DNA of 64,000 bases from Lytechinus pictus (Eukaryota): NCBI RefSeq assembly GCF_037042905.1, contig NC_087246.1, positions 8,308,001 to 8,372,000 on the forward strand. Direction: 5' to 3'. Below are positions 28,801 to 47,674 of this stretch, in pieces. Position 1 is the stretch's first letter, and each line of letters starts with the position of its first letter. The position numbers were made by a program, and so were the translations under genes. The notes under the pieces are model-generated. The model ran no database searches. It was not told the origin of the DNA and worked only from the letters and a program-made list of their open reading frames with translations.

Positions 28801-31800
28801 ACATTAATTTCTTTTGACATTCCATCTTAATCCCTTCACAAAGACCCCAACATTGATGAATTGGAAGAAACGGGGGTTTCTCTTCAATGTTATAATAAGG
28901 ACATAAGTATTTCGTTTGGAAATGGTGAACTGGCTCTTTATTTGCATTTTATGATTCAATAATATTGTTTTATTTGTTGAGCGGTATTTTAGGAAGAATT
29001 TTCACCAATAAAACAATTATCTCTTGTGATTTTTTTTTTCATTTCTTTCGTAAAAAGTGGGGGGATGTTTGTACAGGCCATCCCCCCCTCCTCGAAAAGT
29101 GGGGGGGGGGGGATATATCCCCCCATCCCCCCGGGATTTACGCCAGTGGTATAAAGGGTATCTCATTACTGTTCTTGGCGTTACACCAGTGTACATTCTA
29201 AATTCCGAGGTTTTACAAATAAATCCAGATCGGCTGTGAATAGTGACCAGCCGAATATTAGATTAAGATTTAAACCATATAGGATTTAAACATATAAAGT
29301 TAAAACATTTGAATTTAAATCATTTGAGATTTAAAAGTTAATCCTACAGATTAAATATATAACAAAAATTTGGCTGGTTACCATTCACAGCCGATCTGGA
29401 TTTATTTTAAATCCATGGAATTCAGAGTGTACGTGTTGATTTTTTTTTCTCATAGGAACATAATAAATTCCCAAAATCTGCAGGCCTATATGGCACCGAA
29501 AATGAAATATTGATTAAAAAATGTAGAGAATGACTTTTTCCAATAACTATTTGCTTTTTAATTCCCTTCACTTTAAGTTAGAATCGATTTTTATTCGCTT
29601 TTTAAGGGTGGGTGTAATTAAAATGTCATACGCACCCAATCAAAGTTACTTTGACACACTGATCAAAATAAAATACAAGGGGCGCGACTGCATGGATCCC
29701 TCCCTAAAGTGAAAATGAACATGACATAATAAATGATTGTGATTTTATGCACCCCCTTTTTCAAAATCACTCTGCGGCCCCGTATGTAAATGATATTATA
29801 ATTTTGAAAACCTTATTATAAAACAAATCTGAATAATCAAACTCAGGTCCATATATAGGCTAGCCAATGAAATTAAAAAAAGAAAATTAGAAGATCAAAT
29901 TAGTTATACTTTTAAAATGACAAACAAAACTGAATATGCAAAACGCGTGTTTACCGGTTTATGACATAGGCCGGTGCCAATGTTTGGAAATCTTTGCCAT
30001 AAAGTTAACACATACACAGTTAATTAACACAATTTCAAGACAGGTAATTATGATGATCACTCAACAGCTGACAATTTGTATAACATCTTATTCCAAGTAT
30101 TTTCAGTTTTGCAATATGTTTGGTTTTAGTACTCACAATTTTGCAACCGTTTTTATATGATAAGTTTATTAAGTTTGCATTTATGAATCTCTTTCATGAT
30201 ATTGTTATCAACTGGTTTTATACACTCAGTTTTAGTAATAATAATCTTTGTAGTATAATACAAATATCCTCAGTCTTCCCGCCCTTTTTCTTCTCTTCTT
30301 CTCCTCCTCCTTATTCCTCTCCTTCTTATTATTCTATCCTTGATTTGTTCACATAATATTGGTCTTATCATTATAGGATCACAAACGCCGGCCATAATTA
30401 TATCAACAGATATCAGCCGGAATCTGCCGGATCATGTTAAATTTGCAGGACCTAGAACGATATGCCTAGGCCTGCATGTTATTTTTAATATTCATCCTTC
30501 CAAATAATCAGAAAATAGAAGTCATTATGATACATCGAAATGTTATGACCAAAGCAATAACGATTGGGATCGATGTATATCGTTGGACTCATATATTATG
30601 CCCTATAGATAGGTCTATATAGGCAGCTAGTTTTGTCCTCAGTTTTGATAGATTCTTTGTTAATTTGAACTTTAATCCAGTGCGATTTACAATTTTGCTT
30701 TTCCATTTGCTTTCGAGCTCATATGTCATCATTTTGTTCCGTTTCTGTGCTATCACTGTACATCCCCCATAGGTACTGTACGCGCATGGCAGGCTGCGAA
30801 GACCTATCGAGTAATGGCAGCCGGTCTCCGCGTAATCACAGAGATTTGACGAAGTACGCCCTCTAGCGTTATTAGTATATATATATCTCTATGCTATAAA
30901 CACATCTTGTATGTTATGGGGGGTCTTTGTTTTATTAGTATCTCTTTTTGTGATTTGTTATTTTTAAATATCTGGGTCTTGAGGAAAGACTACGCTATAC
31001 TTCTATGTTAGAATGATACACGTCGTATAAGCTAAAACAACAACAACAACAGTTATTTAACATTAAGAAGAATTAATTTTCGATCTTTGTCTGGAAGATT
31101 GTTTAAATGTTTTATATAACTGTGTCTGGAGAAAAAAGACTGTGACTTTGCGCTATATGAACGCATTACTATAGGGTTTTAGTTCAGAACAGATTCGCGA
31201 AAAACCCCTTCAAATTTATTACATTTGTGGGTTAAGTCATTATTACATTTGTGGGCGATGAAAAAATTATTACATTTGTGGGTGAAATTATTACATTTGT
31301 GGGTAAAGTGTTACTACATTTGTGGGCGTTATTACATTTGTGGGCGTTTATTACATTTGTGGGTGTAACACCCCCCCCCCCGCCGCCTCTTTGAAAGCAT
31401 TTCATTGCCGATGGCACTGTAGCTTCCTTATGCAGGCATGCATGTTTCTCAATTTAACAGTAATGTTATGACACATTTCATGAGAAATAGACTTAATATT
31501 GATAAAAACAGTGATTTGCACATATCCCAGAGGTTTGCACATTTCCCGTGAAAATTGTTCATTTGTACATATCCCGTCGTCACGTTTGCACAGATGCCGT
31601 TGATAAATTTTGACAGATTTCCAAATTTCCCAGCATGGCGTTTGCACAAATACCGTTGTTTGCACAAATCCCGGCGAAATTTTGCACATATACTGTTGTT
31701 TGCACATATCCCGGCGTTTGCACATAACACGGCTCCACAGGGGTACGGTACCCATCTCAACGTCCACAAGTGATGTTTTAGTCATGAAATGAATTATTCA

Positions 31801-34800
31801 TAATTTAATTTTCTCTGCAATTGAATGCTCCAGTCTTCATGGTCTATATGTATGTATGATGCATAATTCACCTGTGCTATTATTTTGAAAAGATTTATTT
31901 CCCAATTCATCATAATATTTGCAATTTTGTCATAATTTTCTTTTTGAAAATTATGCTATTTTGTGACTAAGGCTACGTCTCGTCTGCTCTTTTTACCGAT
32001 AGTATCGATATCAAGGTATTCTAGTTAGGAAGCCTTTCGAGAAACAGGTTTAGTAAGATTGGAACTAACTCCATGGTCGGTGGATAAAGATATGACTAAC
32101 TTGTCCATGTGTTGAGAAACGGGCCCCAGGATGCTGCACTAACCATAATGTATACAAATGATGACCAAGTGAGTGCAAGACTCTTTTGAACTTCCATAAG
32201 TCATAACTCTCACATAAGATGCATCTTTTTACTTGCACTAAGTTTAGTTTTGTTCAACTGCACCAAATGTCATGTGTTTTTGTGATTGCGGTCTCAGCCA
32301 AGTACGACTATACTCTGTAAAGAGGACTGTACTCAATGGAAGAAGAAGAATTTCATTATCAATTTTCATGAACCATTTTTTGAAGAAGAAAATTGCTTCT
32401 TTTAACTCTTTCCAATATGGCAATAAGATTGATTCTCTCCTTTGATTAAATGGAACAAGGGTGCTTGCACAATTTTTGTTTATTCACAATGATAGAGATT
32501 CAAATTGAAAATTATGATTTACTTTGTTTGCAGGCAGCGCTGTCACCCATTGAAGATGACTTGGATAATTTTGGAGAGCGGGTGGGGGAGGAGATTGAAG
32601 CCCTTGGGAACCAGTGCGAGGAGAATCCACCTTATGTCAAGCACTTTGATGCATGGGGGAATCGTGTGGATGATTTAATCACATGTGAAGCATGGAAAAA
32701 ACAAAAGGCCATAGCAGCTGAGGAAGGGATCGTGGCTATTCCATATGAAAGGAAATATGGATCTTGGAGGTAATGCTTTTAATTGTGTTTTTAAGTTAGC
32801 AGTCAGGGACCAAAATATGGCATCTAGAAGTAAAACAGTGTTCTGTGTGCTATATAAATGGGCTAATATGATTATGTTCTTGAGAAGTGTATCATGGCAA
32901 GAATGCTAGATGGAGTAATCTGGAAAAAATTGAAACATTGCATAACGGAGGAAAGAAAAAAAGTGAAATTGGTCACATGAGATCAGATATGACCTGATCC
33001 ACCTTTGACCTTTGTTAAAAAAAAGGAACAAACCAAAATACAAATTGTAAAGCCTTAATCAGTGAAGCATTAAAAGTAAAAAAGATCATGTTTGAAGGTT
33101 TGCAAGGTGATATGGACGATCGCCGAGTGAAGATAGAGCAGGAGAGGGGACTCAAAGTTCCGGCAGATTAACTCTCAGATCCATGAAGACAGGACAGTCA
33201 ACCTGCTTGAAACGTCAAGTCTTCTGTTTTGCTCCTCTCTACAACTCCACCTGCCGACTCAAGCCAGCCTCCTCTTATCTCTCCAACTTAAGTCAGCATT
33301 ATCTCAAATACTCAAGCCTATCATCTCTCAAACTCAAAGTAGCCTTCTTTTCCCACTACTCAAGCTTCTCAAATTTTTCTGATTTATAGTCCAATAAGGA
33401 TAACACTCTATAACAAAAGAATACTCTACTTTCTAACCTCCACTTTCTTGCCTGTCCATTTCACTTTTAACTCTATCCCATTTTCTGTAGTCCTTTCCAC
33501 ATGGTGTAGAGTAAACCACTTCCACTTCTGCAAAAGTCAAGAAAAGTGAAGATTTGTCTGATCAATCGACAATTGTCTAAATTAGTCTTGCATGTGACAA
33601 GGCACTTCTTTTATGGAATTTAAGAAACCCTGCTGGTATAACCTCAGAAGGAAATCACACACTTAATGCATGTACATGATGCCTTCTAATGTAGGTTATC
33701 ATAATAATTAGGGTCTTCACATAAAGATATAGATATTATGGTCCAAGCCATGTTTTGCAATATTTCTGAATACATATCTGTACACTATGATTTTTTTTGT
33801 GGGTTTATATTTTATATGGTTTAATAAATTGAAATTGAATTGAATACATAATGTTCAACGTGGGTTCGATTACCAGTCATGACGTGTTTTCCTTAGCAAG
33901 AAATTTACCCACATTTTGCTGCACTCAACCCAGGTGAGGTAAATGGGTATTGGCAGAAAGTAATTCCTCATAAAGTTGTGAGCACCGGAATCGGTAGACT
34001 ACATGTAGCTTAGCCGGGGTAATTACATGTAGGAGTGCCTTGAGTACCTAACAAGGTGGATACATGATGTATGTGCACTATGTAAATTTATTCTTATTAT
34101 TGTATAGCCTATAAATGTACTATCGCAATATAAGTTAGCACTGAAGTACTCGAGTTCTTATTATTCTTGAAATTTAAAGTTCATTTTGATATTTTGGTAA
34201 AATCATGGAATTCTTCATGAGTGACTTTTTTGAAAAAAAATATTCCTTAAATGCCAAGAATAATTTTGTTGCATTGTGCGAAAATTGTATAGGCCGATTC
34301 CATGGTCAGTCGCATAATACACTAATACTAAGCCCTACATACACTTTTTTTTCTAGACCTACTTCAATAAATAGAAGATTATTTTTCTAGATGTGACACT
34401 GTTTGGTTGCAGGAGTCACTATACCAGGCCTGCTTTGTACATAGTCCTATCATTTAGTGATTCAATGTCAACAATACCTTTCTGTTTTTATATATTAGTG
34501 TGTGATTATATTCAATAGAAATGCAGGTTGCAGTTAACCCTTGAATCGTTAGAAAAGATACTGTTCAAAGTCACTTTGGTGACAAAATATTTATTAGGGA
34601 ATAATTTTGCTTATCAAATTCGATTAATAATTTTGGCAATAAGAGAAGAGCTCTCCTATAAGTTCTGTACAGTCCTATCTAAAAATCTGCCATACAAAAG
34701 GCTTTTTGTTGACTTTAAGAATATGTTGAGCAAAATGTACAATGCGATACCAGGAAAATTATTCCGTTTATAATAATAGTGATAATAGTAATTCATTTTA

Positions 34801-37800
34801 AGATAATTTTTTACATGTGCTGGATTGTATAAATCTACCATTGAAATTGAAAGTATGAATACAACAAAACATAAAGTAAACAAAATGTGCAAGGCACAAT
34901 AAATAGTGAAAGCAATTATACAATATGCACAATAACAGGCCTTCTATTTATTTGAAAAGTATCAGTCAAGAGCATCACTCATGTATCTTGCTTGTATTTC
35001 TACAGCCGTGTTTATCAAGCTGCAAAAATGATATTGTATGGGCCATCATCTGGTCTTTATTCCTGTCCTTTGGCTATGACTGATGGAGCTGCTAAGATCT
35101 TTGAGGTAAAATTAGAAGTTTGTATCCACTTGTTCTATTATCAGACAATAATATTGTATACATGTAGCCCTTGATACAGAGTTTCTAAGCACTTTACAAA
35201 AAAAAGATTTAGTAACATACATATAATTGATCATTTAACAAACAAGAATGAAAATTTAGTATGTAAACTATTATCATATTACAAATTACAAATTTGGTAA
35301 CCAACCTACTAATGGTCCAAATTAGTGTTTGATCCAATTATCACTCAGTCTAACTTTCCATAAGTCCAATGTCCTGATGGCCCACTTTCTATTATATGCA
35401 CTTTGTCATGTGAAATTCAATCAGAAACTAAGTGTGTGAAACCAAGTGGATATTAGACGATGACAGTGGCGGACCGTGACCTGGAGGAGACAAAGCATTG
35501 GGGGGTGGGCACAGCATTGTTCACAAACAATACAGTGCCCCTCCAATGCTTTGTCTCCTCCGGGTCACGGTCCGCTACTGGACGAAGACATAGCTTATTG
35601 TGTTTTCAGCCAAATGCCATAAATGTGTTAATAATTTTGGTTTTACTGACATCAATTACTTGATTTTATGAGGTTTATTTATTGATCACAAAAGTGTCAC
35701 CGACAAATTTCAGCATAAATAGAAAAAGATAAAACACAAAAGGTTTAAAAAACAGAAATACATTAGAAATTAAAAAAGCAATAATTAAATAAGATTGCTG
35801 AAAACACCACAACAAAATCAATTACTTGATTTTATGGCGTAATTGGCCATGGCGTAATTTCCTTCAGCAAGAAATTTATCCACATTGTGCTGCGCTTAAC
35901 CCAGGTGAGGTGAATGGGTACCCAGTAGGAAGAAATTCCTTGAATGCTTGAGCGCCTAGGCAGCCCAGCTAAAGTCGGGGTAATAATAATAGCAGGGTCT
36001 GCTGGGAGAACAGTTTTCAGAACTGAAGTGGCTTCCCTGGGTAAATATACCTACATTATTATTATCACAAAATTCTATACCAAAAGTTAGCACATTTGTA
36101 ATTGTCACTGACAAATTTCAGCGTAAAAAAAGAATGAAAAACAAAAGGTCGAAAAAACAGAAATACATGTATGAAATTTAAAAAGCAATAATTGAATAGG
36201 ATTGCTGAGAGCACCGCAAAGGATTTCTACACTGAAAATTGGCACATTTACGGCTTTATTTAGGGAGTAAGAGCAAAATGTATAATTTCACATATTAATT
36301 ACACAAATTAATTGTGCATACATATAGTTAAGCCTAATTAACTAAAACTTTTTTTTTCTTGAAAAAAAAACACTGAACAGTTTTGTAGATTACATTACAG
36401 ACGAGGTGCACGCTAATTTGTGCATTCCATGGCCAAGATCTCAAGGGGGGGGGGGGGAATCTACAAGCCCAGCCTAGCTATGTTGAATAAGTTATTTGGG
36501 ATATTGCAGTGTGATTTGTTCTTGAACTGAATATTTGCAAAGATTAGATAACTCGGACCAGTTCTATTAGATCTGTTAATCAGCTGAGTGTTTGTCCATA
36601 AATGATAGATAGTAGACTCCATACGTCATGGGGGTGGTGTGATGTTTCATATTTAATTTGATTGGTTTTTTTTCTACTGTTTGCCATACGCATGCACTTA
36701 ATTTACAGAATACTGATGAATCGATCCAGGATCCTTGAAATAATATTTCTTTTTATTATTTAGTACACTGTACAAGTTACTTGTTTGATTGCATTACCCT
36801 ATCAAAGTATCAAGCATGAATGTGAAGAGATACAGTGTACAAAATAAATTCATATAAATTATATTATTTTGTAAAGGAATCATGTACAGTGAAAGAGAAA
36901 CTACAATTTATTGCTCATTTCAAAAATAGGCTTTCAAATTATTCATTGAACATGAGGAATGTTTACCCAATAACTTTGACCTATACTATCAACCCAATAC
37001 ACAGAGTTGTAAAAAAAATGTTTATGCTGCTTTATTTGAAATTTGCACATGTAAGATATTGAGTATGTTTTTCAGTTGTTACCATACTTCTGCACAGGTC
37101 ATTGCCACATTGTAGTTTGTATACCGGTAACTGGCACTTCCTCATACATGTATTTGTGTAACATGTACTGTTATTTCATCATTTAAACCATGTTTGTTTG
37201 AAATTATGCTTTGCTTGAATTTCTTTACCTGATGCGGGATGAGCACCATATCATTAATGTGCTATTCTACCGTTAAGTAGAGCAAATGTATTCATCGTAA
37301 TCTTACTGATGTGATATTCATTTCAGAATGATAGTGTGCTTTCATCTGAGTTGCAACGGAGTGCCTTTGGTCATTTGACATCTCGGAAGCCTGAAACATT
37401 TTGGACATCTGGACAATGGATGACAGAGAAGAAAGGAGGATCCGATGTAGGTTAGTACTACTCAATAACCTTTATGACCTGGATCATTCAATTTCAAAGA
37501 CAGATATTTTTGCACATGCATTCTTCTATTTCAGTCATTTCTATCTTTAGCCTGAATGTGCATGTAGATGTGTGAGTTTTAAAACACTCACACGTATTTG
37601 AAGTAATCTTAAAGAAAAACTTCATAGTTATTGAGGATTCATCCGCCTTACCAGAATCATTGCACAGTTATACTATTTATTGGGACTTGGACAGCTTAGA
37701 GTTCTTTTGATGTTTCTAGTCTGTTCATCGGTGTACCTCTTGACCAAAGCTATCAACATTTGCATACAATCGCTTGACCGGAGCATTATTGAGTCACCTT

Positions 37801-40800
37801 CAATTCCAAGCCCATCTTCAAAGAAGCTAGCTGCTCTGTCAGTCCGGCAGTCAGGCAGTTTAGTCAGTATTCTAAGTTTAAATTCGGTTTCTCCCTGTTG
37901 AATGGGGTTTGCTAGATTCAACTCTCACATCATCACATATCACACTACATCCAAACTTTATTATTGTTGTTATTTATTACCCCCTCCCCCTTCACTTTGC
38001 ACAATTCAGTGCATCCTCCTCCATCAGCCCACCCCCTCTCTTTCTAGTAATGATGAATTTTTGTTTGAAGTTCAGCATGAGAAATATACATGAACAGTTG
38101 TGTAAACATAACAGCTTTCCTTCAAAACTTTCTCCTTTATATAGTTGAATTCTTTTAATTTTCTATATAGCTGGTGGAACAGAAACATTGGCCTACCCAC
38201 AGAACGATGGATCCTTCAATCTCCATGGTTACAAGTGGTTCTCGTCAGCCACAGACAGTGATATGACTCTAACTTTAGCAAGAATTGTAGATGATGATGG
38301 CCAATATAAAGAGGTTTGTTCTTTGCTCCTTGCATGTAATTTTGAGATTGATAACCAGTAGTTGCCATTATAGACCTGTATATTTGAGTGTTGATTATTT
38401 AAGATTTCTTGAAAAGGGTCAAAGAATTTAGGGGTCATCATCTAGCATGAGTTCAGGTCACATAATTATGGTCAAAAGTAATTTAGGATCAATTAATTTT
38501 GACCATGTTGTATCAATATCCAAAACTTAAACCAAGGTTAAGATTTTGAATTTTCAAGATAATTTTGAAAGTTGAAGTCCCTATTCCATGAAACCTACAT
38601 ATTTTATAATGGTTATCAAGTAAGACAAATACTTGAATGGTCATAAGGATGAGATAAATGAACTGGTATCAAGTTAAAAAAAAAAATTATCTAAAGTTTA
38701 TGTTGAAATATAAGTCTTTATTATATTTCATATTTAAACTTTGACGTATTTGTTAGAGGTATATAGATGAGTATAATTTCAGGTTACTTGTTTAAGGTCA
38801 AAGGTCATATCAGATGAATTAACTTGGATAAGAATTGTTATTGTGTAGATTATATCTCAAAGAATTATTTTTTCAAATTATTGAAATTCAAAGTCAGCAC
38901 TACTTGCTACATTGAATCGCATAATGAAGGCGAGGCTGCTTAGAGATTCCACGTGTTATTACTTTTGTATAATTGTTTTCTTTTGTGAAAGTATTTTCTA
39001 CTGAACAGTAGATGCAGTAAATTATCTTCTTCAAATTATGAACCAAGGCTTGCTATTCATTTAGTAAAAAACTGTAAAATTAGAAAGAACAGAACCTTAT
39101 ATAGCAAGTGTTGGATCACCATTTTTTTTCTTAAAGGAGAATGAAACTCTTGGAGCAAGTTAGCTTTTGTGAAAGCAGAAAAAACAAAGAATAAGATCAA
39201 CAAAAGTTTGAGTAAAACAGGACTAGCAATAGAAGAGTTATGAGCATTTGAATGTCGAGATCACTAATGCTATGGAGATCGTCCCATTGGCAATGCGACC
39301 AAGATCTATGATGTCACAGATGAACAACTCTCCCCTTTTGGACACTGAAAATATACCCCAAAACATCTCTTTTTGCTCATTCTAATCATATGACAAACGA
39401 TTCATCAATGATATAATGTTGTGAAACCTCTGTACTTGTCCTCTCATAAACAGAACACCTCACCTTGTGATAGACTCTATAAAAGTGAGAATATAAGTGA
39501 AATAAGTACTAAAGTAATGAGGGAGTTGTACGTGTGTGACATCACAGATCTTGGTCGCATTGCCAATGGGAGGATCTACATGGCATTAGTGATCTCAATA
39601 TTCAAATGCTCATAACTTTCTTATTATTCATTCAATCTTCCTCAAACTTTCAACAATATGTTTCTTTGATTTTTCTCTTTGATATGGATTCAGCTGGTTT
39701 CAAGGGTTTCATTCTCCTTTAAGTTTACCCTTGTACATGTACATGTATGTTGTATTCTTAAATTGCAATGACCTTTGGTAGCATTCATGTGTGCATGTGA
39801 TACAGCATTCACAGTTAGTTTGAGTTAAGCCTACTTAATTGTACAGTATATACTACACTGCTTTCCCATTATTCATCACTATAATGTGATATCACCTATT
39901 AATTTGCGTGCATAGAAAATGCATAGTACCAGTAATGGCAATTGCTTCCTACGCAGGGAAACTGTAGCATAGAGATGTTTTATGAGTCTTTGTTTCCATG
40001 ACGTCCTTCAAACATTTGTTTCATAGGGTACCAGAGGGCTATCTTTGTTTTACCTTGAAACTCATACAGCAGAAGGTAAACTGAACGGTATAGAGATACA
40101 CAAACTGAAGAACAAACTTGGCACCAGGCAACTTCCTACTGCAGAATTATTATTAGATGGGACTAAAGCACATCTTGTAAGTACACATATCATCTGTTTC
40201 ATAATGTTAAAGGACTTGAATTTGCTAGTAATTGGTTGAAAATATAAAATTATTCTCATTTTAGTTGAATTTGCCTCTTTGATGTCCAAGGGAGATATTA
40301 TTGTCGAGTTATTTGCTCATTTACACCTCATATCAACACATGTATGGTACTTTTTTGTAAACCACATTAGGAGATCAGTTTTCAGAAAAAATGGCCCATG
40401 GTTATAATATTGATTAGTATCACACATAGACATTACACCCAATTGCACACAGGTGGCGACTCTTTTTTTTTCACATGGGTGGGAATTTAAATGAAATTGT
40501 ATTCAGAAAGCACATTCTTAGTTTTAGAGTGGTTATTCTTCTGTGGAGTGAGACAATATTTTGGGGTATTATCTTGAAATAAAAGTTTGGATTATGATAA
40601 TCCTTACATTGTTGAGAGAATTTAAAAAATCATTTTCAAAATCAAGATTTCATGTAAATATTGGAACTGCGTTTGTTGTATACCAGAATGCTTCTCAGAA
40701 AGAGGCTCTGCTACAAAGTGAGAAGTGAGCTCATGGCTCACCTCACCAGCTTGAGTTATTGTAGGGGGGGGGGTTAAAATTCCGTTGCCTTAAGGATTAA

Positions 40801-43800
40801 ACACCGAGACTGGTAAGTGGCTCTAGGGGAACCATTGGATAAAGAGATTTTCAACCTCACCAGTTTTATATGCTTCCTTTGTCTGGTGTAGATAAGTTTT
40901 GAACACTGACAAGCCGCCCCACAACCAACAATTAGGCAACCAAAATGAATATTGAGATTTTTATTGAGCTTGAAAGGAACTTCTTAAACTTTAAAATGCT
41001 ATTCAATAAGCCTCATAATTATTTTATTTAATGCAGAGGATACTCAGCGTGAGCTTCAAACATAAGGAGAAAACAAGGTTTGAAGTTTAGGGATCACTGC
41101 AATCCCAGTGAAACTTCCAAGCAGTGTGAAGAAAACGGTGTCAAAGAAATCTTGTATCTTTTCTATTGTTCAACATTACAACTTATATTTTTACGGTTTG
41201 AAGTAGAAGAATTGCTTTTTCAGATTTTATAAACTAATTTCTAAATTTTCCTTTTGAAGACCAAATTACTATTTTGGCTATTAACAGAAAACCTTCCCTG
41301 GTGACTTGATGGTTTATGGGTGGCTGGTCACAATTATGCAAGTGTAAGAAATGACATGGACAACAGCTCTGGCAACAATGGTTTAGCTTTAATCAATGTT
41401 TTCTATTGCAATTTCTTTCACAACATATTTGAGTAAAAGAGTTGCCAGAGCTATTGTATATTATATGATTTCTTACATTTATGTACATGTGTATTTATTC
41501 ACTCTTGTACTTGTAATATACCGGCATGTATTCAGTGGTGCATTCATTTAATCAAGTATTTATTCCTTCATGTTTTTATACGCCCGTCCTACAGAACGTA
41601 TTATGGTAACATGCTCGGTGTCCGTACATCCGTCCGTTAACTATTCCTTGTAAACGCGATAACTTAACTTAACCTAAGCTCATATAATTTGGTGTGTATG
41701 CAGGCCTTTGTGTATCATGAAATGATTAGTGTCCTAAAAGGGATAGGAAGGGAGGGAGACCAATTTTATTTTAGATAGAGACAAACAGAAGGAGAGAGAT
41801 ACATGTACACATGTAGAGTTAAGGGGGGGGGGGGGGAGTAGGCGCTATATAAAGGTCAATATACATTTATACATATATAATATATGAGAAAATTTTTTAA
41901 ATGGGAGTGTTTATTGCAGGGAGAAAGACCATGCAATGATGAGGAAGAAGGAGAACATAAATATACTTGTAAAGGAATGGAGACAGGGAGAGGAGAAGAA
42001 AGTTGAACAAATTGACGAACGAAAAAAAGTAAGAAGAGCCACACGCTCTTTTTAATACAATTAAAATCAGCAGTAAATACTAAAATTGATTAAAAGCTGG
42101 GCATGTCTGTCACCACTCAGGTAATGAATGCCACTGTGCATAAAGCACAAGTCAAAAGAGAGACAAGGCCAAAAATAAGTGGTGATGATTCGATTAAAAT
42201 AGTGTAAATAATAGATGATTGCTGCTAGGCATGCATTCATGGCTTCCCAGACGGAATGAATGCTAATGTGAATCATAGAGCTCTTTCTTGATGAATTGAT
42301 GTCTGTGTTATGTGTTTCTCTCCTTGCTTGAATGCATGTATATGTATTGAAATGAACCATATCATCTACCAAAATTGATAAGGATGTTCTATCAATTTTG
42401 AGACATGTACTGATGTTTCATTTCCAATTTTGTAAAATATTTCCAGTTTCCATTAGATCTATCTGTACTAAGTTCACAATTTTGAAAAGCCTGTCCTAGA
42501 CGGGACTTATTATGCTATCACGCTCCGTCCATCCGTCTGTCTGTCCATCCATTAACTTTTCCTTGTAAACGCGATAACTTTAGTTTAACTTAACCTAGGG
42601 CTAAGCTCATATAATTTGGTGTGTATGATACTAGCATGGATCCCAGGAAGCCTATTGATATTGAGGTCATAAGGTCAAAGGTCAAGGTCAGAGTGACATG
42701 TTTTCATTTTACCCGTTTGCAGTCCTTGTAAATGCGATAACCTTAGTTTAACTTCAATGCAATTCCATTGATTTTGAGGTCAGAAGGTCAAAGGTGAAGT
42801 CGCCACCTTCCACTCTTCTTGCTTGACCAATATCTCCATTTTCTGCTTTACAGGCGGGCGTATTATTTGCTCGCCTTAGCGACACTCTTATTACTAATTG
42901 ATGTATATTTTTGTGTTATCATTAATTTATATGTTTATTATACATGTATGTATTATTAATGACAATGATAATAATGACAATGATATATTCACCCTGGGTA
43001 GCCACTTTAGTTCATGTCTGTATGATTTCATTGTAAGTCATGTTTTTATTCACATCATTTTTCGCTCTGCAAGAGTCTGCATAACAATTCATTGTTATCT
43101 ATTCATGTATCGATTACTACTCTGATCATTATAGGTATCTGAACCAGGATACGGTGTTTCCACTATCACTCCCATGCTGACAGCCACGCGCTACCACAAT
43201 GCATCTCATGCTGTAGGTTATATGAGAAGGTGAGATCATCAATTGGATGTTTTTTTTTTTTTTTAGGTATCCAAACCAGGGTTTGGTGTGTCTAACATCG
43301 CCACTATGCTGACCGTTAGCCGCTTCCACACTGCTATTATGGCAGTAGGTGCAATGAGAAGGCAAGTTGAATTAGTTGGGTCTTTGTTTTCCCATTGTAG
43401 GTATCTGAACCAGGGTATGGTGTAGCCTCTATCTCTCCTATGCTGACTGTTACTCGCTACACCAATGCAGCTAATGCTGTAGGTGCGATGAGAAGGCAAG
43501 TTGAAATACGACTTTCTTTCTGAACAGCCTGATTATTGCCTTATTGACCATCAAGAAAACCCAAGCCAAGGGAGTAATGTTTTGTACTGATTTTCAAATT
43601 TGATTTGGAAATAAGCAGATTTTTATTGCAATAAAATCTTTTTGTTTGCCATTTTTGGTGAGCAAATCAGAATTGACCCTTATCTTGATGAAAAAATGCT
43701 ATATTAAGGCTAAAGTTGATACATTTGAATTGATTTCATTTTCATGAAATAATTTTGATACTCATTGATATTGATAATTCCATCATAATTATCATGAAAT

Positions 43801-46800
43801 GTATTGATAATTTATGAAATTTCTAAAAATTCACTATTATAAGTTTTGAAATCTTTGAGTTGTGAATCGAAACACGGCACAATAATAAAACCACAGATGA
43901 ACATGATTAAATTTGTAAACTTCGTAAGTTGGATGTATGAATATAAAGGGCATCATGAAATTAGGCAATAATCACATTCTGCAATCATGTTATTTTAAAT
44001 TTATTACAAATAAAAGCCACTTTGTTGATACAATAAAACCATATATTGCTCATTCTTCGACAGGGTAAGCATATTAGGTATGTCATGTATTTTACATTAC
44101 CCAATCAATGGAGAAAAGGCGTGCTATATTGTGACATTACTCAATTCCGCTAGGCCATTTTCCAATTGTTTGCGTGAAATAAACAAGCAGTACAATGCAA
44201 AGTGCAATGATACTATATGATATAAAGAGCTACGTGCAAATGTCATTTCAATCAAAATTATTTTTGGTTCTCTGTTTTTTTTAACTGAAAGCATTGCTGT
44301 TGTTATGAAAAGTGGTAGTTTGTATAATAATGATATTGGATTTCTTTTGTAGTATATCAGATATATTGTATTCATCAGCATTAATATTACATTCGTCTAT
44401 GGTACGTGCAATTAATGGAAAATATGTGATAAACCACTCAAGTGCATCCACTATTATATAGGGCCTAAAGCATTCAAAAGGCCTCATGTGTTTGGATAAT
44501 TGATAATTTGAATATTACCGAAAAAACTCTACGATATTCTTTTTTTTTCTTGTATGGACCTGTAGGATGATGCTCAATGTGAGAGACTACTCGTTCAGAA
44601 GGAAAGCATTTGGGAAGTTGATTGTTGACTGGCCTCTTCATGTACAAACTATGAGCAGAATGGAGGTGAATAAACTTAATTTCATATTTAACCATTTGAT
44701 TTCTTAATTTTCCATTTCCCATCAAAGTAATCAGTGATCAAGTGTGGAAATTCTTTGTTGTAATATCTGCTATTGGCACATTGACTATTTTTCTGCCTAC
44801 TGTAAAATACAAATGATTATGAACACTTTGTTACTCTTTAGCTTGGATGTGATGAAAAGAATGTTTTAAAAAGAATATATGAATAATCATAAAACCATAA
44901 ATGCTACCGGTGAATTTGAAAACCACCTTGATGTATAAGCCACAATACTATATTTTGTACTTTTTGAGTATGTTTTATAACTCATTTTCATTGTTTTGGA
45001 TTTTTGGCGAGTGTAGCAATCACCATATGAAAAGTGGAAATGTGTTGATGTTATAATTTAAAAAGAGCAATGTTTCAGCATGAACAGTATTTATTGTCGT
45101 AATATTCATGATATTTGTTTTCCATTCACATGTACAATTAGTCATTTATGGTAGTAGCAATGTTATTGACTTATACATAACTGAAAAAAGACCATTAGAT
45201 TTGATCAATTTTATGAGAAAGACATCTTTCATAATTTCTATGTTCATTAAAGTGTAATTGTTGATTCTTGATATCTTGTTATAAAAATTCTTGATACATA
45301 TTGATATAATAATAATAGAAATCTCTATCTTTTGTAGGTGGAGACAAGAGGAGCCATAGCTCTGCTCCTGGAATGCTCCCATCTCCTTGGCAAGGAGGAG
45401 ACAAAGGAAGCATCTGAGGATGATCTTAACCTTCTCCGTCTTCTCATCCCAGTTGTCAAACTCTACACCGGCAAACAGGTTAGGTACCCATACGATAAAA
45501 TGAATATTATGTGTATATGTTTCACCTTGCATATGCCCGTGATCCAAGCTACATGCAGAAGTTATGAATTGATGCATAGGTTTGAGGTTCATGCACTGGT
45601 CATGTATTTCAGATGTTGATGGTTAAGGTCAGTCTCCAGACATAAATAATCATAGCTGATTGATTCATGACTGCAAAAACTCAATTGCACTCACATATGG
45701 AGTTTGGAATTGATAATATCCCCTTGTTATATTGTCATTGAACTTCATTGAGTTGAAAGAGATTAATATTGTTATCAAATATGTTTTTATTTCAATTATT
45801 CAATTGTGAGTTTGATGGTAGGTTAATTTTGTTCTTTGATTGAAGGCCAAGTACAAGTGAGTTGTTTACACTTGGCAGATTATGGACTGAAAAACTGAGT
45901 CCTGAGGGAAATAGTTTGTGTGAATCCGCAAAGCACATGAAAAAATGCTATTGAGCCATTGGTTTTTGCGCAACGTCATCATATCCTTTAACTCTTGATC
46001 AATTATTTTGTGCAACTTGAATTTTTACATTGAAGTTTCAGACTTCTCATGCTCATTTACATGTCCTCAGGTACCAAAGTATTGAAGGAAAACTGAATTT
46101 TATGATTATTTAATAAAAAGTATTGTAATTTATTTGCCCATGGGTAAAAGAATAAATCGTTTCACAATATCTTTTTACTATGACACAAGCCAGTAATGAA
46201 GAAGAAACTCAGAATAATATTAAAAAAAGATTTTCCATTTGTAGAACTAGGCATTTACAGAATTGGCAAATTTAGGATAAATTAAGATTACAAATCAGCT
46301 TAATGATGTATTTTTCCAGCTTTTCCAGGACTTCAGACATTATTACCTTGCTTTAGCCCATCAAACTTACTAATATCACACACACATTTCAAGGGATCAA
46401 TTCCTGCCATAAATAAATAATGTACTTTCATATTTTTGTCATTGTGGTTGGGTGCCTTCAAACAGTTAACTTTTGCTATTTGCATATTAGATAAATCTTT
46501 GGCCATATAGAAATTGCACTTCATCTTTTATTTTTATTTTGCAGGCTGTTAGCATTGCCTCTGAAGGTCTAGAGAGCATTGGTGGACAGGGTTACATAGA
46601 GGATACAGGCCTCCCAAAGATACTCAGAGATGCTCAGGTAAGTACTACCACTTGTGTGCTTATGATAAAAGTATTTAATAATGTTGGAATGTTCCACCAC
46701 TCAACTTCAGGCAATTATTCAATGTAGTGTAACACCATGCTCAACCAATATTGATTGCCCCAGAACAAAAAGTAATCATTTAGTTTGTTTTAGCATGCTT

Positions 46801-47674
46801 GCATTTCTCTAACCTGGCTTCTTCAGTTCTGTTTTGAATAATCTTGTAAATGTAAAGTCGTAATCTGATGGCCCTCAGTTTGGAATGTTTACTTGATTTC
46901 TAAAGCCTGATCTGATCACATTCAATCTGTTGCAGGTTTTGAGCATCTGGGAAGGTACTACAAACATCCTTTCCTTAGATGTACTCCGCTCTATCATCAA
47001 GAGCCAAGGCCAAACTATGGAGACATTCCTCAGACAGGTCCAAACACGCTCTGCTCCATTCATCTCTGCCTCCAACCAGGACATTCAAGCAACAGCCAAG
47101 CTCATTGGGCAGTCATGCAATAATCTGAAGAATTTCTTGATGGAAGCAGCCAATCAGGATGCAGGTTACATGGAGCTGGCTGCCAGGGACTTTGCCTACA
47201 GTATTGCAAGGACCTACACTGGGTTGCTGTTGTTGGAACATGCTACATGGGAACGAGCCAGTGTGGAAGATATCGCTGTAGCTAAAAGGTGAGATAAACA
47301 TACTCTTGAGTAGACAACTTGATGATAGATACTTATTAAGAAAGTTTACAGAGCTGAATATTTTTAACCTGACTAGATTTAGCTGAGAATTCTGAAAAGT
47401 ATATATTTGTGATATGCCACTGTGATCCAAGAAGGTGCTTGGTTTCAAAATATTTTTGACTTCATTTTGTACTAGTGTTACAGATATGGTGATGATATAG
47501 TACTTTGAATATAGATATCCGGAATAGTTATCCTCATTTTTTTAATGTGTCTGTAGGTGGTGCCAAATGGATATGTGTCCAGTTTCAACTCAGCATGCAA
47601 CAGGAACTTATTCAATGGAAGCAAGCTCGCTGGACTACAGAACAGTCATGGCAGGTTACCAACAAAAAGATTAA
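10492..47674 (+). CDS. acdh-11: Acyl-CoA dehydrogenase, AidB / C. elegans ACDH-11 type (often annotated 'ACAD family member 11-like'); whole gene, about 657 aa
   Basis: Spliced frame is consistent across exons 10492-10812, 32534-32769, 35006-35105, 37327-37450, 38171-38313, 40027-40176, [43135-43229 | 43267-43361 | 43401-43495], 44566-44665, 45338-45478, 46545-46637, 46936-47288, 47557-47674 (1974 nt). Motifs: [76 protein letters not shown] (catalytic Glu). Confidence 0.93.
10905..11357. mobile_element. MITE with CAGTAGAGGCGCACGGCCAATA TIRs and 5-bp TSD
   Basis: TIRs with repeated GGAGAC..TCTCC palindromes; TSD CAGAA on both sides. Confidence 0.8.
11419..11536. mobile_element. Palindromic mini-MITE (hAT-like CATTGGCGGCGG end)
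   Basis: Near-perfect 118-bp hairpin; no clear TSD. Confidence 0.65.
12914..13619. mobile_element. Transib-type MITE with CACAGTG termini
   Basis: 16-bp TIR CACAGTGGCAAATTGT; 5-bp TSD TATTT. Confidence 0.82.
14156..14196. repeat. (CA)n microsatellite
   Basis: Seen directly in the sequence. Confidence 0.95.
15603..17807. mobile_element. hAT MITE
   Basis: CAGGGTTG...CAACCCTG, 8-bp TSD AAAAAAAT, subterminal GTTTTAAAAC repeats. Confidence 0.78.
16192..17222. mobile_element. Degenerate piggyBac-like (TTAA CCCTA..TAGGG) MITE fragments nested in the hAT MITE
   Basis: TTAA|CCCTAAC at 16188, CCTTAATAGACTGGG at ~16537, CCCAGTCTTATTAGGG ending at 17222. Confidence 0.45.
18156..18296. mobile_element. 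Small Harbinger-type MITE
   Basis: GGGAGCATTTCAT / ATGAAATGCTTCC; 3-bp TSD CCG; related copy at ~48790-49165. Confidence 0.65.
20892..23477 (+). CDS. Sola2 DDD transposase (861 aa)
   Basis: QMDFAENY...[35 protein letters not shown] triad motifs; CLCQKHQN and CYCQSC Cys clusters; a splice acceptor immediately upstream of the ATG suggests a 5'UTR intron. Confidence 0.9.
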   Translation: MARSRAEIQAAYRQRKRQKMGENAYLQAERQRVKKYYKPVDTLTKKRVQERRTQVNRRVRKHRDRVRRVRQEMEQRRNMNIDDVGYTADDDSAISDISPDISNQLGLTIKMPFQKPRRKRVSRCLSKAHRNIEQLTLKLQAAKKDKTRLKKRCERLQNKVMTSMPTRKEVKNTPRSRTNSQLEDEGIDPSRVPSIRKRLLFSNAMMEEIQGSSNTSRKMSDRRILHQLVAGSKVLKKYRLLKLLRTETGLGRRNLSKANKHTKSTQQSRPTWTSLHLEVVEFLHRDDVSRMCPGKKDSSKGKDGTKCQKRYLTDYLSNLHERYLAETDGKRKISLSAFNRVRRTLCPHIKRVQFASRDLCLCQKHQNVALKLKALQSLGGTVNDNPDEFIKEHNEAQVDILLNNLQSEQIQFDEWSRVEVDGRKKIKIIRISQSKPDFIKRFQKEIQEFRQHVVRIKNQFRALLDCKNSLKPDECIIQMDFAENYVCVPLEEVQSAYWCQDGVTLHPIVVYFRNDGNELVHQSFAAVSDDRNHNTSTILAILTKLMPKLKELIPHLHKVHYWTDSPTSQYRNKTMFSLVSEHADIFDGIHAQWNYFESGHGKGPCDGIGGTIKRLADTAVKRRAAVIQDAYDFFAWASQERHECSGSKINFFFVAKGDCAAGSLLIAERWSSVKTFPGTMQMHAVIGHDNGVLLRKLSCYCQSCYGSREEGQVETMCEGWKHNRLLYRSTTMSTTGASVTPQSPSNTSMSENDESSPTTNEASSGTYGVDDWVAAVYDKQWYIGKVLKFDSSDIHIDFMAKCSGTHTGGKYKWPVKKDAIWVAWDKVLCHITPCFCDTSQRIVTLSPEQKALIEEAFKAVV
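24097..25901. mobile_element. Tc1/mariner-type MITE with long TIRs, inside Sola2
   Basis: TA|CAGTGCGTCCCAAAA...TTTTGGGACGCACTG|TA; about 215-bp near-perfect TIR, with further imperfect inverted homology. Confidence 0.88.
27636..29148. mobile_element. hAT MITE
   Basis: CACTGGCGTAAATCC / GGATTTACGCCAGTG; 8-bp TSD GTATAAAG. Confidence 0.85.
27743..28718. mobile_element. hAT MITE nested in the previous hAT MITE, with GCGCGAAGCGCG subrepeats
   Basis: CAGTGGCGTA / TACGCCACTG; 8-bp TSD TATGTCCA. Confidence 0.85.
29194..29429. mobile_element. CACTA-like MITE
   Basis: About 60-bp TIRs (AATAAATCCAGATCGGCTGTGAAT); TA flanks. Confidence 0.7.
31215..31370 (-). mobile_element. Solo transposon end TGTTACACCCACAAATGTAA with 7 subterminal TACATTTGTGGG units
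   Basis: Tandem 13-bp motif ending in TGTAACA; no partner end in the window. Confidence 0.55.
32534..32769 (+). CDS. acdh-11: ACAD exon 2
   Basis: CAG|GCA...; [19 protein letters not shown]; donor AG|GTAATG. Confidence 0.92.
33855..34100 (+). mobile_element. tRNA-derived SINE (sea-urchin SURF1/SINE2-like)
   Basis: GGTTCGAT B-box; core CACTCAACCCAGGTGAGGTAAATGGGTA; TTA-rich tail. Confidence 0.7.
35006..35105 (+). CDS. acdh-11: ACAD exon 3
   Basis: [33 protein letters not shown]; AG/GT bounded. Confidence 0.92.
35464..35580. mobile_element. 117-bp palindromic hAT MITE
   Basis: CAGTGGCGGACCGTGACC / GGTCACGGTCCGCTACTG; TSD GACGATGA/GACGAAGA. Confidence 0.82.
35845..36066 (+). mobile_element. 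5'-truncated SINE of the same family
   Basis: CAGCAAGAAATTTATCCACATTGTGCTGC..ACCCAGGTGAGGTGAATGGGTACC; (ATT)n tail. Confidence 0.7.
37327..37450 (+). CDS. acdh-11: ACAD exon 4
   Basis: [25 protein letters not shown]; AG/GT bounded. Confidence 0.92.
38171..38313 (+). CDS. acdh-11: ACAD exon 5
   Basis: [36 protein letters not shown]. Confidence 0.92.
39135..39718. mobile_element. Kolobok-type MITE
   Basis: TTAA|AGGAGAATGAAAC...GTTTCATTCTCCT|TTAA, plus an internal ~80-bp inverted repeat (39240-39318 / 39535-39613). Confidence 0.85.
40027..40176 (+). CDS. acdh-11: ACAD exon 6
   Basis: [11 protein letters not shown]...[24 protein letters not shown]. Confidence 0.92.
41573..42892 (+). mobile_element. 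Helentron/DINE-1-like non-autonomous elements (partial copy at 41573-41700, fuller copy at ~42490-42892)
   Basis: TTTTTATACGCCCGTC start, (GTCC/GTCT)n, GGTCAAAGGTCA core, 3' sub-TIR GGCGGGCGTAT and short stem-loop TCGCCTTAGCGA. Confidence 0.6.
43135..43229 (+). CDS. acdh-11: ACAD exon 7a (mutually exclusive)
   Basis: TAG|[31 protein letters not shown](R)|GTGAGA; 95 nt, phase 0-2. Confidence 0.85.
43267..43361 (+). CDS. acdh-11: ACAD exon 7b (mutually exclusive, GC donor)
   Basis: polyT-TAG|[31 protein letters not shown](R)|GCAAGT; 95 nt. Confidence 0.82.
43401..43495 (+). CDS. acdh-11: ACAD exon 7c (mutually exclusive, GC donor)
   Basis: TGTAG|[31 protein letters not shown](R)|GCAAGT; 95 nt. 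Confidence 0.82.
44566..44665 (+). CDS. acdh-11: ACAD exon 8
   Basis: [33 protein letters not shown]; phase 2-0. Confidence 0.9.
45338..45478 (+). CDS. acdh-11: ACAD exon 9
   Basis: VETRGA...[16 protein letters not shown]. Confidence 0.92.
46545..46637 (+). CDS. acdh-11: ACAD exon 10
   Basis: [31 protein letters not shown]. Confidence 0.92.
46936..47288 (+). CDS. acdh-11: ACAD exon 11
   Basis: [18 protein letters not shown]...[15 protein letters not shown]. Confidence 0.92.
47557..47674 (+). CDS. acdh-11: ACAD exon 12 (terminal)
   Basis: TAG|[10 protein letters not shown]...GYQQKD* in the correct phase. Confidence 0.85.

What the first reader, a model, noticed from the sequence alone, without database searches (positions are those of the whole stretch)
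43135..43495. Triplicated, mutually exclusive exon that swaps the substrate-pocket helix of an AidB/ACDH-11-type acyl-CoA dehydrogenase
Seen: three tandem 95-nt exons, each with its own AG acceptor and donor, same phase (0 to 2), and no stops or indels. They read 7a [32 protein letters not shown], 7b [32 protein letters not shown], 7c [32 protein letters not shown]. Framework residues (VS.PG.GV..I..MLT..R...A..AVG.MRR) are kept while positions around the conserved Arg vary (YHNASH / FHTAIM / YTNAAN). Including any two exons frameshifts the protein. Established: this segment is helix G of the ACAD fold, which lines the acyl-chain cavity and carries the CoA-contacting Arg (FDKTR in MCAD) and the catalytic Glu in IVD/LCAD. 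C. elegans ACDH-11 binds C11/C12 acyl-CoAs in heat-related lipid signalling. Inference: one gene makes three enzyme or lipid-sensor isoforms with different substrate pockets, a splice-selected specificity switch that I do not know to be described for this family.
Basis: partly seen in the sequence, partly recalled or inferred. Interest (0 to 1): 0.92.

Follow-up and report, generated by a model that had tools for sequence, protein, structure and literature searches.

The report
Three-way mutually exclusive exon in ACDH-11-type dehydrogenase
One acyl-CoA dehydrogenase gene carries three tandem copies of a 95-base exon and splices in exactly one per transcript, giving three enzyme versions that differ only in the helix lining the active site; the same exon is also duplicated in bivalve molluscs.

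Summary
Three 95-nt exons lie in tandem at 43135-43229, 43267-43361 and 43401-43495. They sit in a single-copy, 12-exon gene for a 657-aa ACDH-11/AidB-type acyl-CoA dehydrogenase ("ACAD11-like").

RNA data join each copy to the shared exons 6 and 8, and no listed junction joins two copies. The spacers are only 37 and 39 nt. Any other exon combination produces an early stop. This is a genuine three-way mutually exclusive exon cluster.

The exon encodes the beta-to-alpha linker and the start of helix G. This includes the equivalents of MCAD Thr255 and Arg256. The four cavity-lining helix-G positions inside the exon (21, 22, 25, 29) all differ between copies, while the opposite helix face is invariant. 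Different pockets are therefore plausible but remain inferred.

The exon is not unique to this genome. RefSeq isoform pairs in Mercenaria and Mytilus differ in exactly this exon, and their second copy shares a signature with 7b (Ser18, Thr22, Met25). Whether this is ancient or convergent could not be resolved.

No paper describing it was found. An earlier scan note on the same stretch had already flagged the short spacers.

Verdict: real, a new member of a known kind, of moderate interest.

The parts
10492..47674 (+). Whole coding span of the ACDH-11/AidB-type acyl-CoA dehydrogenase gene. It has 12 exon positions: E1 10492-10812, E2 32534-32769, E3 35006-35105, E4 37327-37450, E5 38171-38313, E6 40027-40176, E7 (a, b or c), E8 44566-44665, E9 45338-45478, E10 46545-46637, E11 46936-47288, E12 47557-47674.
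   Evidence: Exons were mapped with homologous proteins and splice-site search. The assembled CDS is 1974 nt / 657 aa with a single terminal stop for each isoform. Pfam finds AidB_N, Acyl-CoA_dh_M and ACDH-11_C. It is the only ACDH-11_C match in the 811-Mb genome.
40027..40176 (+). Constitutive exon 6 (end of the beta domain). Its donor is shared by all three variants.
   Evidence: RNA junctions 40176>43135 and 40176>43267 are GT..AG. It is 77% identical to the Littorina homologue and matches ACDH-11 residues 248-295.
43135..43229 (+). Exon 7a, GT donor. Motif TRYHN; His25 and Tyr29.
   Evidence: Junctions from exon 6 are seen in X8 (5 reads), X9 (3 reads) and an X1 contig. Junctions to exon 8 are seen in X1 and X2 contigs.
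43230..43266 (+). 37-nt spacer between 7a and 7b, made of the 7a donor plus a 15-T tract and an AG. It is too short to be removed as an intron.
   Evidence: Sequence. No 7a>7b junction is listed.
43267..43361 (+). Exon 7b, GC donor (gcaagt). Motif SRFHT followed by Ile-Met. It resembles the second exon copy of bivalves.
   Evidence: The junction from exon 6 is seen in X9 (3 reads) and an X2 contig. The junction to exon 8 is seen in an X2 contig at depth 21.8. The shared signature with bivalves is shown.
43362..43400 (+). 39-nt spacer between 7b and 7c.
   Evidence: Sequence. No 7b>7c junction is listed.
43401..43495 (+). Exon 7c, GC donor (gcaagt). Motif TRYTN; Asn25. It is a mosaic: the 5' flank and body resemble 7a, while the 3' end and the first 12 intron bases resemble 7b.
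   Evidence: The junction to exon 8 is seen in an X2 contig (depth 12.2) and in X8 (2 reads, one start). The mosaic pattern is shown.
44566..44665 (+). Constitutive exon 8. Its acceptor is shared by all three variants, and its first base completes the last Arg codon of exon 7.
   Evidence: Junctions from 7a, 7b and 7c all land at 44564(+2).

Best explanation
This is a genuine cluster of three mutually exclusive exons in the only ACDH-11/AidB-type acyl-CoA dehydrogenase gene of this genome.

Shown: each mature transcript carries exactly one of 7a, 7b or 7c between exons 6 and 8.

Inferred from geometry: neighbouring copies cannot be joined, because the 37- and 39-nt spacers are too short for a spliceosome to assemble between a donor and the next branch point. 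The one remaining double inclusion, 7a plus 7c, and also complete skipping, shift the frame into early stops and would be removed by nonsense-mediated decay. The GT donor of 7a against the GC donors of 7b and 7c probably makes 7a the default and the other two regulated choices.

The 32 swapped residues form the beta-to-alpha linker and the first roughly 25 residues of helix G. The conserved face of the helix is identical in all copies (Arg19, Ala23, Ala26, Val27, Met30). The face that lines the acyl cavity in other ACADs (positions 21, 22, 25, 29) differs in every copy, as does the residue equivalent to MCAD Thr255 (Thr or Ser at position 18).

Inferred function: the three isoforms keep the same fold, FAD site and catalytic Glu (WEG motif) but have different acyl pockets. 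One gene therefore handles or binds different acyl-CoAs, with usage varying between samples.
For: Sequence: three 95-nt copies in the same phase, all open.

RNA: junctions run from exon 6 to 7a (8 reads in two raw RNA-seq runs plus a contig) and from exon 6 to 7b (3 reads plus a contig). Junctions run from 7a, 7b and 7c to exon 8. In run X2 three parallel unitigs have depths 34.5, 21.8 and 12.2. Run X1, from the same study, shows only 7a. No junction between two copies is listed.

Exon-specific words of 7b and 7c occur in 8 runs of the same organism from two studies, at shares of 0.63 or 0.26. They are absent from X1, which suggests sample-dependent use.

Frame: every combination other than a single copy gives an early stop.

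Selection: dN/dS is 0.27, 0.41 and 0.47 for the three pairs, with dS up to 1.06.

Mapping: an ungapped HMMER alignment to human MCAD puts exon position 18 at Thr255 and position 19 at Arg256. LCAD residues L294, I295, V298 and A302 line the cavity, and E291 on helix G is the catalytic base (PMC11153573). MCAD helix G is part of the active-site core, and the R256T mutant is inactive (PMC2667288). In P. aeruginosa FadE2, Met130, Glu296 and Gln303 together set chain length (PMC11890623). Placing Glu296 and Gln303 on helix G is my inference from that paper's domain boundaries.

Relatives: equal-length RefSeq isoform pairs in Mercenaria and Mytilus differ only in this exon. Both copies have intact splice sites in the genomic loci.
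Against: No structure, model or assay of the three isoforms was possible here, because spliced sequences could not be submitted to the modelling tools. The pocket difference is therefore an inference from alignment to distant ACADs.

Helix G also forms part of the tetramer four-helix bundle, so some of the differences could act on assembly instead.

Support for 7c is thinner than for the other two. It rests on one contig and two reads from a single start position, and its junction from exon 6 was not among the listed rows.

Read counts are small because only about 6% of each raw run was read. The samples are coded, so tissue or condition specificity cannot be stated.

All three copies depart from the family consensus: Tyr or Phe replaces the near-invariant Arg6, and position 20 is aromatic. 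The consequence of this is unknown.
Confidence: 0.75

Rival explanations
1. The exon swap tunes oligomer assembly, partner binding (for example ETF) or thermal stability rather than the substrate pocket. The isoforms would differ mainly at the helix G/H to I/K bundle or in the interdomain loop.
For: MCAD helix G belongs both to the active-site core and to the four-helix bundle that assembles the tetramer (PMC2667288). Several variable positions (3, 9, 10, 12, 13, 20, 24) lie in the linker or off the predicted cavity face.
Against: The four helix-G positions inside the exon that line the cavity in LCAD all vary. The opposite face (19, 23, 26, 27, 30) is identical in all three copies. This is the reverse of what an interface switch would predict.
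Confidence: 0.13
2. Only 7a is functional. Copies 7b and/or 7c are recent duplicates used at noise level and are on the way to decay.
For: 7a has the only GT donor and the highest depth. X1 shows 7a alone. The evidence for 7c is thin. Relatives show that copies can decay: there is a broken relic in Lineus and partial repeats in Saccostrea.
Against: All copies keep their frame, acceptor, consensus GC donor and the invariant framework residues. dN/dS is below 0.5, with dS of 0.4 to 1.1. In X2, 7b and 7c reach 63% and 35% of the depth of 7a, and in X9, 7b takes 3 of 6 exon-6 junction reads. Their exon words occur in 8 runs from two studies.
Confidence: 0.07
3. The three copies are an assembly artefact, such as a collapsed or expanded tandem repeat or merged haplotypes, rather than one locus.
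For: None specific. The window does contain an assembly gap elsewhere (9153-9284).
Against: The copies differ by 19-32%, far more than alleles would. Independent RNA data sets from several studies contain each copy spliced to the same flanking exons. The geometry is regular, with distinct spacers.
Confidence: 0.01

Closest known systems
C. elegans ACDH-11 (PDB 4Y9J/4Y9L) and its bacterial relatives Bd2924 (6SD8) and AidB (3DJL)
   Same: Same architecture: AidB_N, ACAD middle domain, ACAD C-terminal helices and ACDH-11_C. ACDH-11 is the strongest solved-structure match on the longer queries; Bd2924 narrowly leads on the 51-aa exon-6 query. The exon-7 equivalent is ACDH-11 residues 298-329, with the TRIHN motif. 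ACDH-11 binds C11-CoA and has been linked to sequestering or metabolising unusual medium-chain fatty acids (PMC6850173, PMC10876521).
   Different: No alternative version of this exon is reported for the worm or bacterial proteins. The window's copies replace the near-invariant Arg in GRG with Tyr or Phe and carry an aromatic residue at position 20, which is seen in none of 167 relatives.
RefSeq isoform pairs of 'acyl-CoA dehydrogenase family member 11-like' in bivalves (Mercenaria mercenaria X1/X2, Mytilus edulis X1/X2; also Mytilus trossulus, M. galloprovincialis and Ruditapes)
   Same: The isoforms are of equal length and differ only in this 32-residue exon. Both copies are 95 nt with AG/GT sites in the genome. 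Their second copy shares Ser18, Thr22 and [Ile/Leu]24-Met25 with window exon 7b.
   Different: There are two copies, not three. All donors are GT. The spacer is 59 nt in Mercenaria and 9.2 kb with reversed order in Mytilus. These are computed gene models, not a described or tested splice switch.
Classical mutually exclusive exon systems (alpha-tropomyosin exons 2/3 for steric exclusion; PKM exons 9/10 and FGFR2 IIIb/IIIc for specificity switching). This comparison is from my own knowledge.
   Same: Tandem homologous exons of equal length and phase, with exclusivity enforced by too-short spacing and/or frame-dependent decay. The swapped segment changes ligand or effector binding.
   Different: A different gene family. 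This is a three-member cluster with 37/39-nt spacers and GC donors. No competing RNA structure of the Dscam type was found.
Helix-G determinants of ACAD specificity (LCAD/IVD catalytic Glu on helix G; P. aeruginosa FadE1/FadE2 specificity inversion)
   Same: The same structural element. LCAD E291, L294, I295, V298 and A302 correspond to exon positions 18, 21, 22, 25 and 29. In FadE2, Glu296 and Gln303, together with Met130 in the N-terminal domain, block the channel. Their placement on helix G is my inference from the domain boundaries given in that paper.
   Different: In those cases the differences lie between separate genes or engineered mutants. Here one gene selects between the alternatives by splicing.

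Membership tests
ACDH-11/AidB-type acyl-CoA dehydrogenase | AidB_N N-terminal domain | tested here: met
   PF18158 matches exon 2 with E 8.5e-7 and 29.6 bits, above the 22.9-bit cut-off.
ACDH-11/AidB-type acyl-CoA dehydrogenase | ACAD middle beta domain | tested here: inconclusive
   PF02770 matches exons 5 and 6 separately at 22.7 and 19.3 bits. Each is below the 33.3-bit cut-off because the domain is split by an intron, but together they cover profile positions 17-95. Full-length relatives carry PF02770.
ACDH-11/AidB-type acyl-CoA dehydrogenase | ACDH-11_C extra C-terminal helical domain | tested here: met
   PF22217 matches with E 4e-23 and 82.5 bits against a 27-bit cut-off. It is the single match in the whole genome.
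ACDH-11/AidB-type acyl-CoA dehydrogenase | Catalytic Glu in the J-K loop (Trp-Glu-Gly, as Trp428-Glu429 in Bd2924) | tested here: met
   The motif SIWEGTT spans the start of exon 11. The Bd2924 residues are taken from PMC6851490.
ACDH-11/AidB-type acyl-CoA dehydrogenase | FAD binding and dehydrogenase or acyl-CoA binding activity | not testable with these tools
   This needs protein expression and assay.
Mutually exclusive exon cluster | Adjacent exons of similar length and the same phase, homologous in sequence | tested here: met
   Three 95-nt exons, phase 0 to 2, 68-81% nucleotide identity.
Mutually exclusive exon cluster | Each copy is spliced to the same upstream and downstream exons in RNA | tested here: met
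   Junctions are shown. The link from 7c to exon 8 is shown; its link from exon 6 is inferred from a unitig of the same geometry as that of 7a.
Mutually exclusive exon cluster | No productive transcript with two or no copies | tested here: met
   All such combinations give early stops. No inter-copy junction is listed among those shown; three further junctions were not displayed.
Mutually exclusive exon cluster | Mechanism of exclusivity (steric) | tested here: inconclusive
   Spacers of 37 and 39 nt are below usual minimal intron sizes. This is inferred from geometry and was not tested by minigene.

The most novel reading that the evidence does not exclude
The cluster may descend from an ancient pair of alternative exons. 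One is an 'A' type (Thr18, Asn22; the near-universal TRxHN) and the other a 'B' type (Ser18, Thr22, [Ile/Leu]24-Met25). The pair would already have existed in the common ancestor of this non-mollusc lineage and bivalves, and would have been lost repeatedly: it is single-copy in amphioxus, frog, abalone and anemone, with a decayed relic in a nemertean and a divergent open copy in Solemya. On this reading it is a deeply conserved splice switch that toggles an otherwise near-invariant active-site-helix Asn in a metabolic enzyme or lipid sensor. If the B type instead arose independently, the convergence on the same residues would itself point to two discrete functional states of the pocket.
Probability: 0.35. 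Interest if true: 0.75.

Novelty: new member of a known kind. Interest (0 to 1): 0.55.

Why it matters
Acyl-CoA dehydrogenases normally diversify substrate range by gene duplication (SCAD, MCAD, LCAD, VLCAD and so on). Here a single-copy gene does it by choosing one of three versions of the active-site helix at splicing.

The ACDH-11 branch is poorly understood outside C. elegans, where it controls a lipid signal by binding or metabolising unusual medium-chain fatty acids. Naturally paired isoforms that differ only at four or five cavity-facing residues are a ready-made experiment. They can show which residues set ligand choice in this branch.

The bivalve parallel offers a test of whether such a switch is ancient or has been invented repeatedly.

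The locus is also a clean, compact example of steric plus frame-enforced exon exclusivity with GC donors.

Tried and rejected
1. I aligned the window's exons to an amphioxus scaffold to build a profile that might reach closer relatives. MAFFT scattered the short fragments, so the alignment was not used.

2. I searched the protein database with exon 11 alone. Only short fragments came back. The best relative's contig (L011) holds exons 9-12 but not exon 7.

3. A region search with the Mytilus B-type exon returned only Mytilus proteins. It says nothing about B-type exons elsewhere.

The exon-6 scan of metagenome contigs gave 80 loci, none with two exon-7 copies at E below 0.01 and none close to this species.

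5. The chiton locus was not on record, and one Xenopus look-up had to be repeated.

6. A tree of 19 exon peptides is unresolved. The window's copies group weakly (49/93), and a B-type clade is not rejected (p-AU 0.44). Ancient origin against convergence therefore stays open.

7. A search for docking or selector RNA complementarity between the shared post-exon sequence and the flanking introns found nothing of 9 nt or more. A Dscam-like mechanism is not supported.

8. The ACDH-11 structure paper (Ma et al. 2015, PMC4441829) is not held. Ligand contacts in ACDH-11 itself could not be read.

10. No orthologue from the window's own phylum could be fetched, so per-copy conservation in close relatives is untested.
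Full report
**The observation.** The stretch 43135-43495 holds three tandem 95-nt segments at 43135-43229, 43267-43361 and 43401-43495. Each follows an AG and reads in phase 0 to 2 without stops or indels. The repeat finder reports one family of three copies spaced 132 and 134 nt apart. A sensitive tblastn finds no fourth copy in the gene. Pairwise nucleotide identity is 81% (a-c), 73% (b-c) and 68% (a-b). One detail was missed: 7a has a GT donor (gtgaga), whereas 7b and 7c have GC donors in the consensus context AAG|GCAAGT.

**The gene.** I mapped the exons with homologous proteins and a splice-site search. This gives 12 exon positions from 10492 to 47674 on the + strand, with a 21.7-kb first intron. 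With any one of the three copies the CDS is 1974 nt (657 aa) with a single terminal stop. Pfam finds AidB_N, the ACAD middle domain (split over exons 5 and 6) and ACDH-11_C. The closest solved structures are C. elegans ACDH-11 (4Y9J) and Bdellovibrio Bd2924 (6SD8), followed by AidB. The catalytic Trp-Glu-Gly motif is present. ACDH-11_C matches only this locus in the 811-Mb assembly, so the gene is single-copy. Public databases name relatives across Metazoa "acyl-CoA dehydrogenase family member 11-like". The window's protein is about 54-59% identical to the best of them. In a tree it falls outside the well-supported mollusc and vertebrate clades, on a long branch.

**RNA evidence.** I laid two raw RNA-seq runs (X8, X9) and two contig sets (X1, X2) on 40000-45500. 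X1 and X2 skip the introns precisely and are therefore cDNA.
- The junction exon 6 to 7a (40176>43135, GT..AG) has 5 and 3 reads plus an X1 contig.
- The junction exon 6 to 7b (40176>43267) has 3 reads in X9 plus an X2 contig.
- Junctions to exon 8 (44566) are present from 7a (X1, X2), from 7b (X2, depth 21.8) and from 7c (X2, depth 12.2; X8, 2 reads from one start).
- In X2 the three exons appear as three parallel short unitigs with depths 34.5, 21.8 and 12.2, which is the pattern of alternative paths between shared flanks.
- X1, from the same study, has only 7a.
- No junction between two copies is among the listed rows. Three rows were not displayed.

The junction coordinates fit only GC..AG introns for 7b and 7c. 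A second index search shows the exon words of 7b and 7c in eight runs of the same organism from two studies, at shares matching both exons (0.63) or one (0.26). They are absent from X1. This suggests sample-dependent use. Runs of a related organism hold a small share, which I could not inspect. Support for 7c is the thinnest.

**How exclusivity works.** The spacers are 37 and 39 nt (also flagged by scan note s1-323433). The first spacer is little more than a donor, about 15 nt, a 15-T tract and an AG. The branch point for 7b must therefore lie within a few bases of the 7a donor. By established knowledge of minimal donor-to-branch-point distances (the alpha-tropomyosin exon 2/3 case), neighbouring copies cannot be spliced together. 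This is inference from geometry. The remaining combinations (7a plus 7c, all three, or none) shift the frame and meet a stop within 20-46 codons. That would send them to nonsense-mediated decay. No complementary docking or selector sequences of 9 nt or more were found. The GT donor of 7a against the GC donors of 7b and 7c is a plausible basis for 7a being the majority form.

**What the exon encodes.** An ungapped HMMER alignment of the amphioxus orthologue to human mature MCAD places exon position p at MCAD residue p+237. Position 18 (Thr/Ser) is MCAD Thr255 and position 19 is Arg256. Published descriptions then give the following:
- MCAD residues 239-244 are the loop between the beta domain and the C-terminal helices. 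Helix G follows and is part of both the active-site core and the tetramer bundle. The R256T mutant is folded but inactive (PMC2667288).
- In LCAD, helix G carries the catalytic Glu291, and L294, I295, V298 and A302 line the cavity (PMC11153573). The equivalence of Glu291 to MCAD Thr255 is from my own knowledge.
- In P. aeruginosa FadE2, Glu296 and Gln303 lie just after the beta domain and so probably on helix G (my inference from the domain boundaries in that paper). Together with Met130 in the N-terminal domain they block the channel and set chain length (PMC11890623).
- In Bd2924 the central helical domain starts at residue 286, which is exon position 6 (PMC6851490).

Transferred to the exon, the cavity-facing positions are 21, 22, 25 and 29. 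These read H/H/T, N/T/N, H/M/N and Y/A/A in 7a/7b/7c, so all four vary. Positions 19, 23, 26, 27, 28, 30, 31 and 32 are identical in all three copies. On a helical wheel the variable and invariant sets occupy opposite faces.

**Selection and history within the locus.** Nei-Gojobori dN/dS is 0.27 (a-b, dS 1.06), 0.41 (a-c, dS 0.41) and 0.47 (b-c, dS 0.60). This is consistent with purifying selection on all copies and an old a/b split, although 31 codons give wide errors. Exon 7c is a mosaic: its acceptor region and body resemble 7a, while its last codons and the first 12 intron bases match 7b. This points to unequal crossing-over or gene conversion. Against a profile of 167 relatives, all three copies are unusual. 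They have Tyr or Phe instead of Arg6 (94% Arg, otherwise Lys apart from two sequences) and an aromatic residue at position 20 (always aliphatic or Thr elsewhere). In addition, 7c has lost His21 and 7b has Thr instead of Asn22.

**Relatives.** Equal-length RefSeq isoforms of Mercenaria mercenaria (X1/X2) and Mytilus edulis (X1/X2) differ only in this exon, and the same alternative exon appears in Mytilus galloprovincialis, M. trossulus and Ruditapes models. I scanned the genomic loci I could fetch:
- Mercenaria has two 95-nt exons 59 nt apart.
- Mytilus has the two copies 9.2 kb apart and in reverse order.
- The protobranch Solemya has the normal exon plus an open, strongly divergent 89-nt copy 433 nt downstream.
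- The nemertean Lineus has a broken relic with a B-like ending about 60 nt downstream.
- Saccostrea has three partial 74-nt repeats of the exon's 5' half.
- Amphioxus, Xenopus, Haliotis, Biomphalaria and Exaiptasia have one copy.

The bivalve second copy shares Ser18, Thr22, [Ile/Leu]24-Met25 and [Ile/Val]27 with window exon 7b. Each of Ser18, Thr22 and Met25 occurs in 10% or less of the 167 family sequences. In contrast, the N-terminal half of each copy resembles its own lineage's partner. A tree of the 32-residue peptides cannot decide the question. The window's copies group weakly (49/93), and a single B clade is not rejected (p-AU 0.44). Eighty metagenomic loci added no further duplicated case.

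**Comparison with what is known, and novelty.** Mechanistically this is a standard mutually exclusive exon cluster (steric plus frame-based), and swapping a binding segment by such exons is well known in other families. I found no paper that reports it for ACDH-11/AidB-type or any other acyl-CoA dehydrogenase. However, automated RefSeq models already encode the two-copy version in bivalves. I therefore file it as a new member of a known kind. The three-copy form, the GC donors and the cross-phylum A/B signature are the new points.

**Limits.** No orthologue from the window's own phylum could be fetched. The isoforms could not be modelled because spliced sequences have no acceptable reference. 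The primary ACDH-11 structure paper is not held. Read numbers are small and the samples are coded.

**Verdict.** The substrate-pocket switch is plausible (about 0.6) but unproven. Interest is moderate.

Noticed in passing
window 43193 (exon 7a, codon 20): All four RNA data sets read T where the assembly has A (X1 35.3/35.3, X2 34.5/34.5, X8 1/1, X9 2/2). This changes TAC (Tyr) to TTC (Phe) at position 20, next to the conserved Arg. It is probably a polymorphism between the assembled individual and the sampled ones.
   Followed up: partly
window 47557-47674 (last exon): The protein ends ...GYQQKD. Many relatives end in a peroxisomal-type tripeptide (SRL, AKL, SSL, PKL, ERL), so this species' protein may lack a PTS1 or may use an unseen alternative 3' end.
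   Followed up: no
window 41470-41840 and 42390-42945 (intron 6): These stretches have very high RNA word depth (up to about 11,000), many variant letters and reads that run on into unlike sequence. They look like expressed dispersed repeats inside the intron, not part of this gene's mRNA.
   Followed up: no
window 18917-27070 (intron 1): An earlier scan note (s1-323505) calls this an intact Sola2 transposon. It lies inside the 21.7-kb first intron of the dehydrogenase gene. I did not examine it.
   Followed up: no
L010:8584-8901 (Saccostrea echinata orthologue): Three partial tandem repeats (74-nt period) of the 5' half of the equivalent exon, one containing a stop, sit directly upstream of the intact exon.
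   Followed up: partly
L009:12509-12597 (Solemya velum orthologue): An open 89-nt, frame-compatible, strongly divergent copy of the exon with AG and GT sites lies 433 nt downstream of the normal exon. Whether it is used is unknown.
   Followed up: partly
L007:about 21876-21970 (Lineus longissimus orthologue): A decayed copy of the exon, with a frameshift and a stop next to an A-run and a B-type-like ending, lies about 60 nt downstream of the intact exon. An assembly error in the homopolymer cannot be excluded.
   Followed up: partly
window 9153-9284: An assembly gap or masked run of 132 N lies upstream of exon 1. I left it untouched.
   Followed up: no
whole protein (window 10492-47674): In a tree of 18 orthologues, the terminal branch of the window's protein is twice the median length (0.92 against 0.46). 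The lineage seems fast-evolving for this gene.
   Followed up: no
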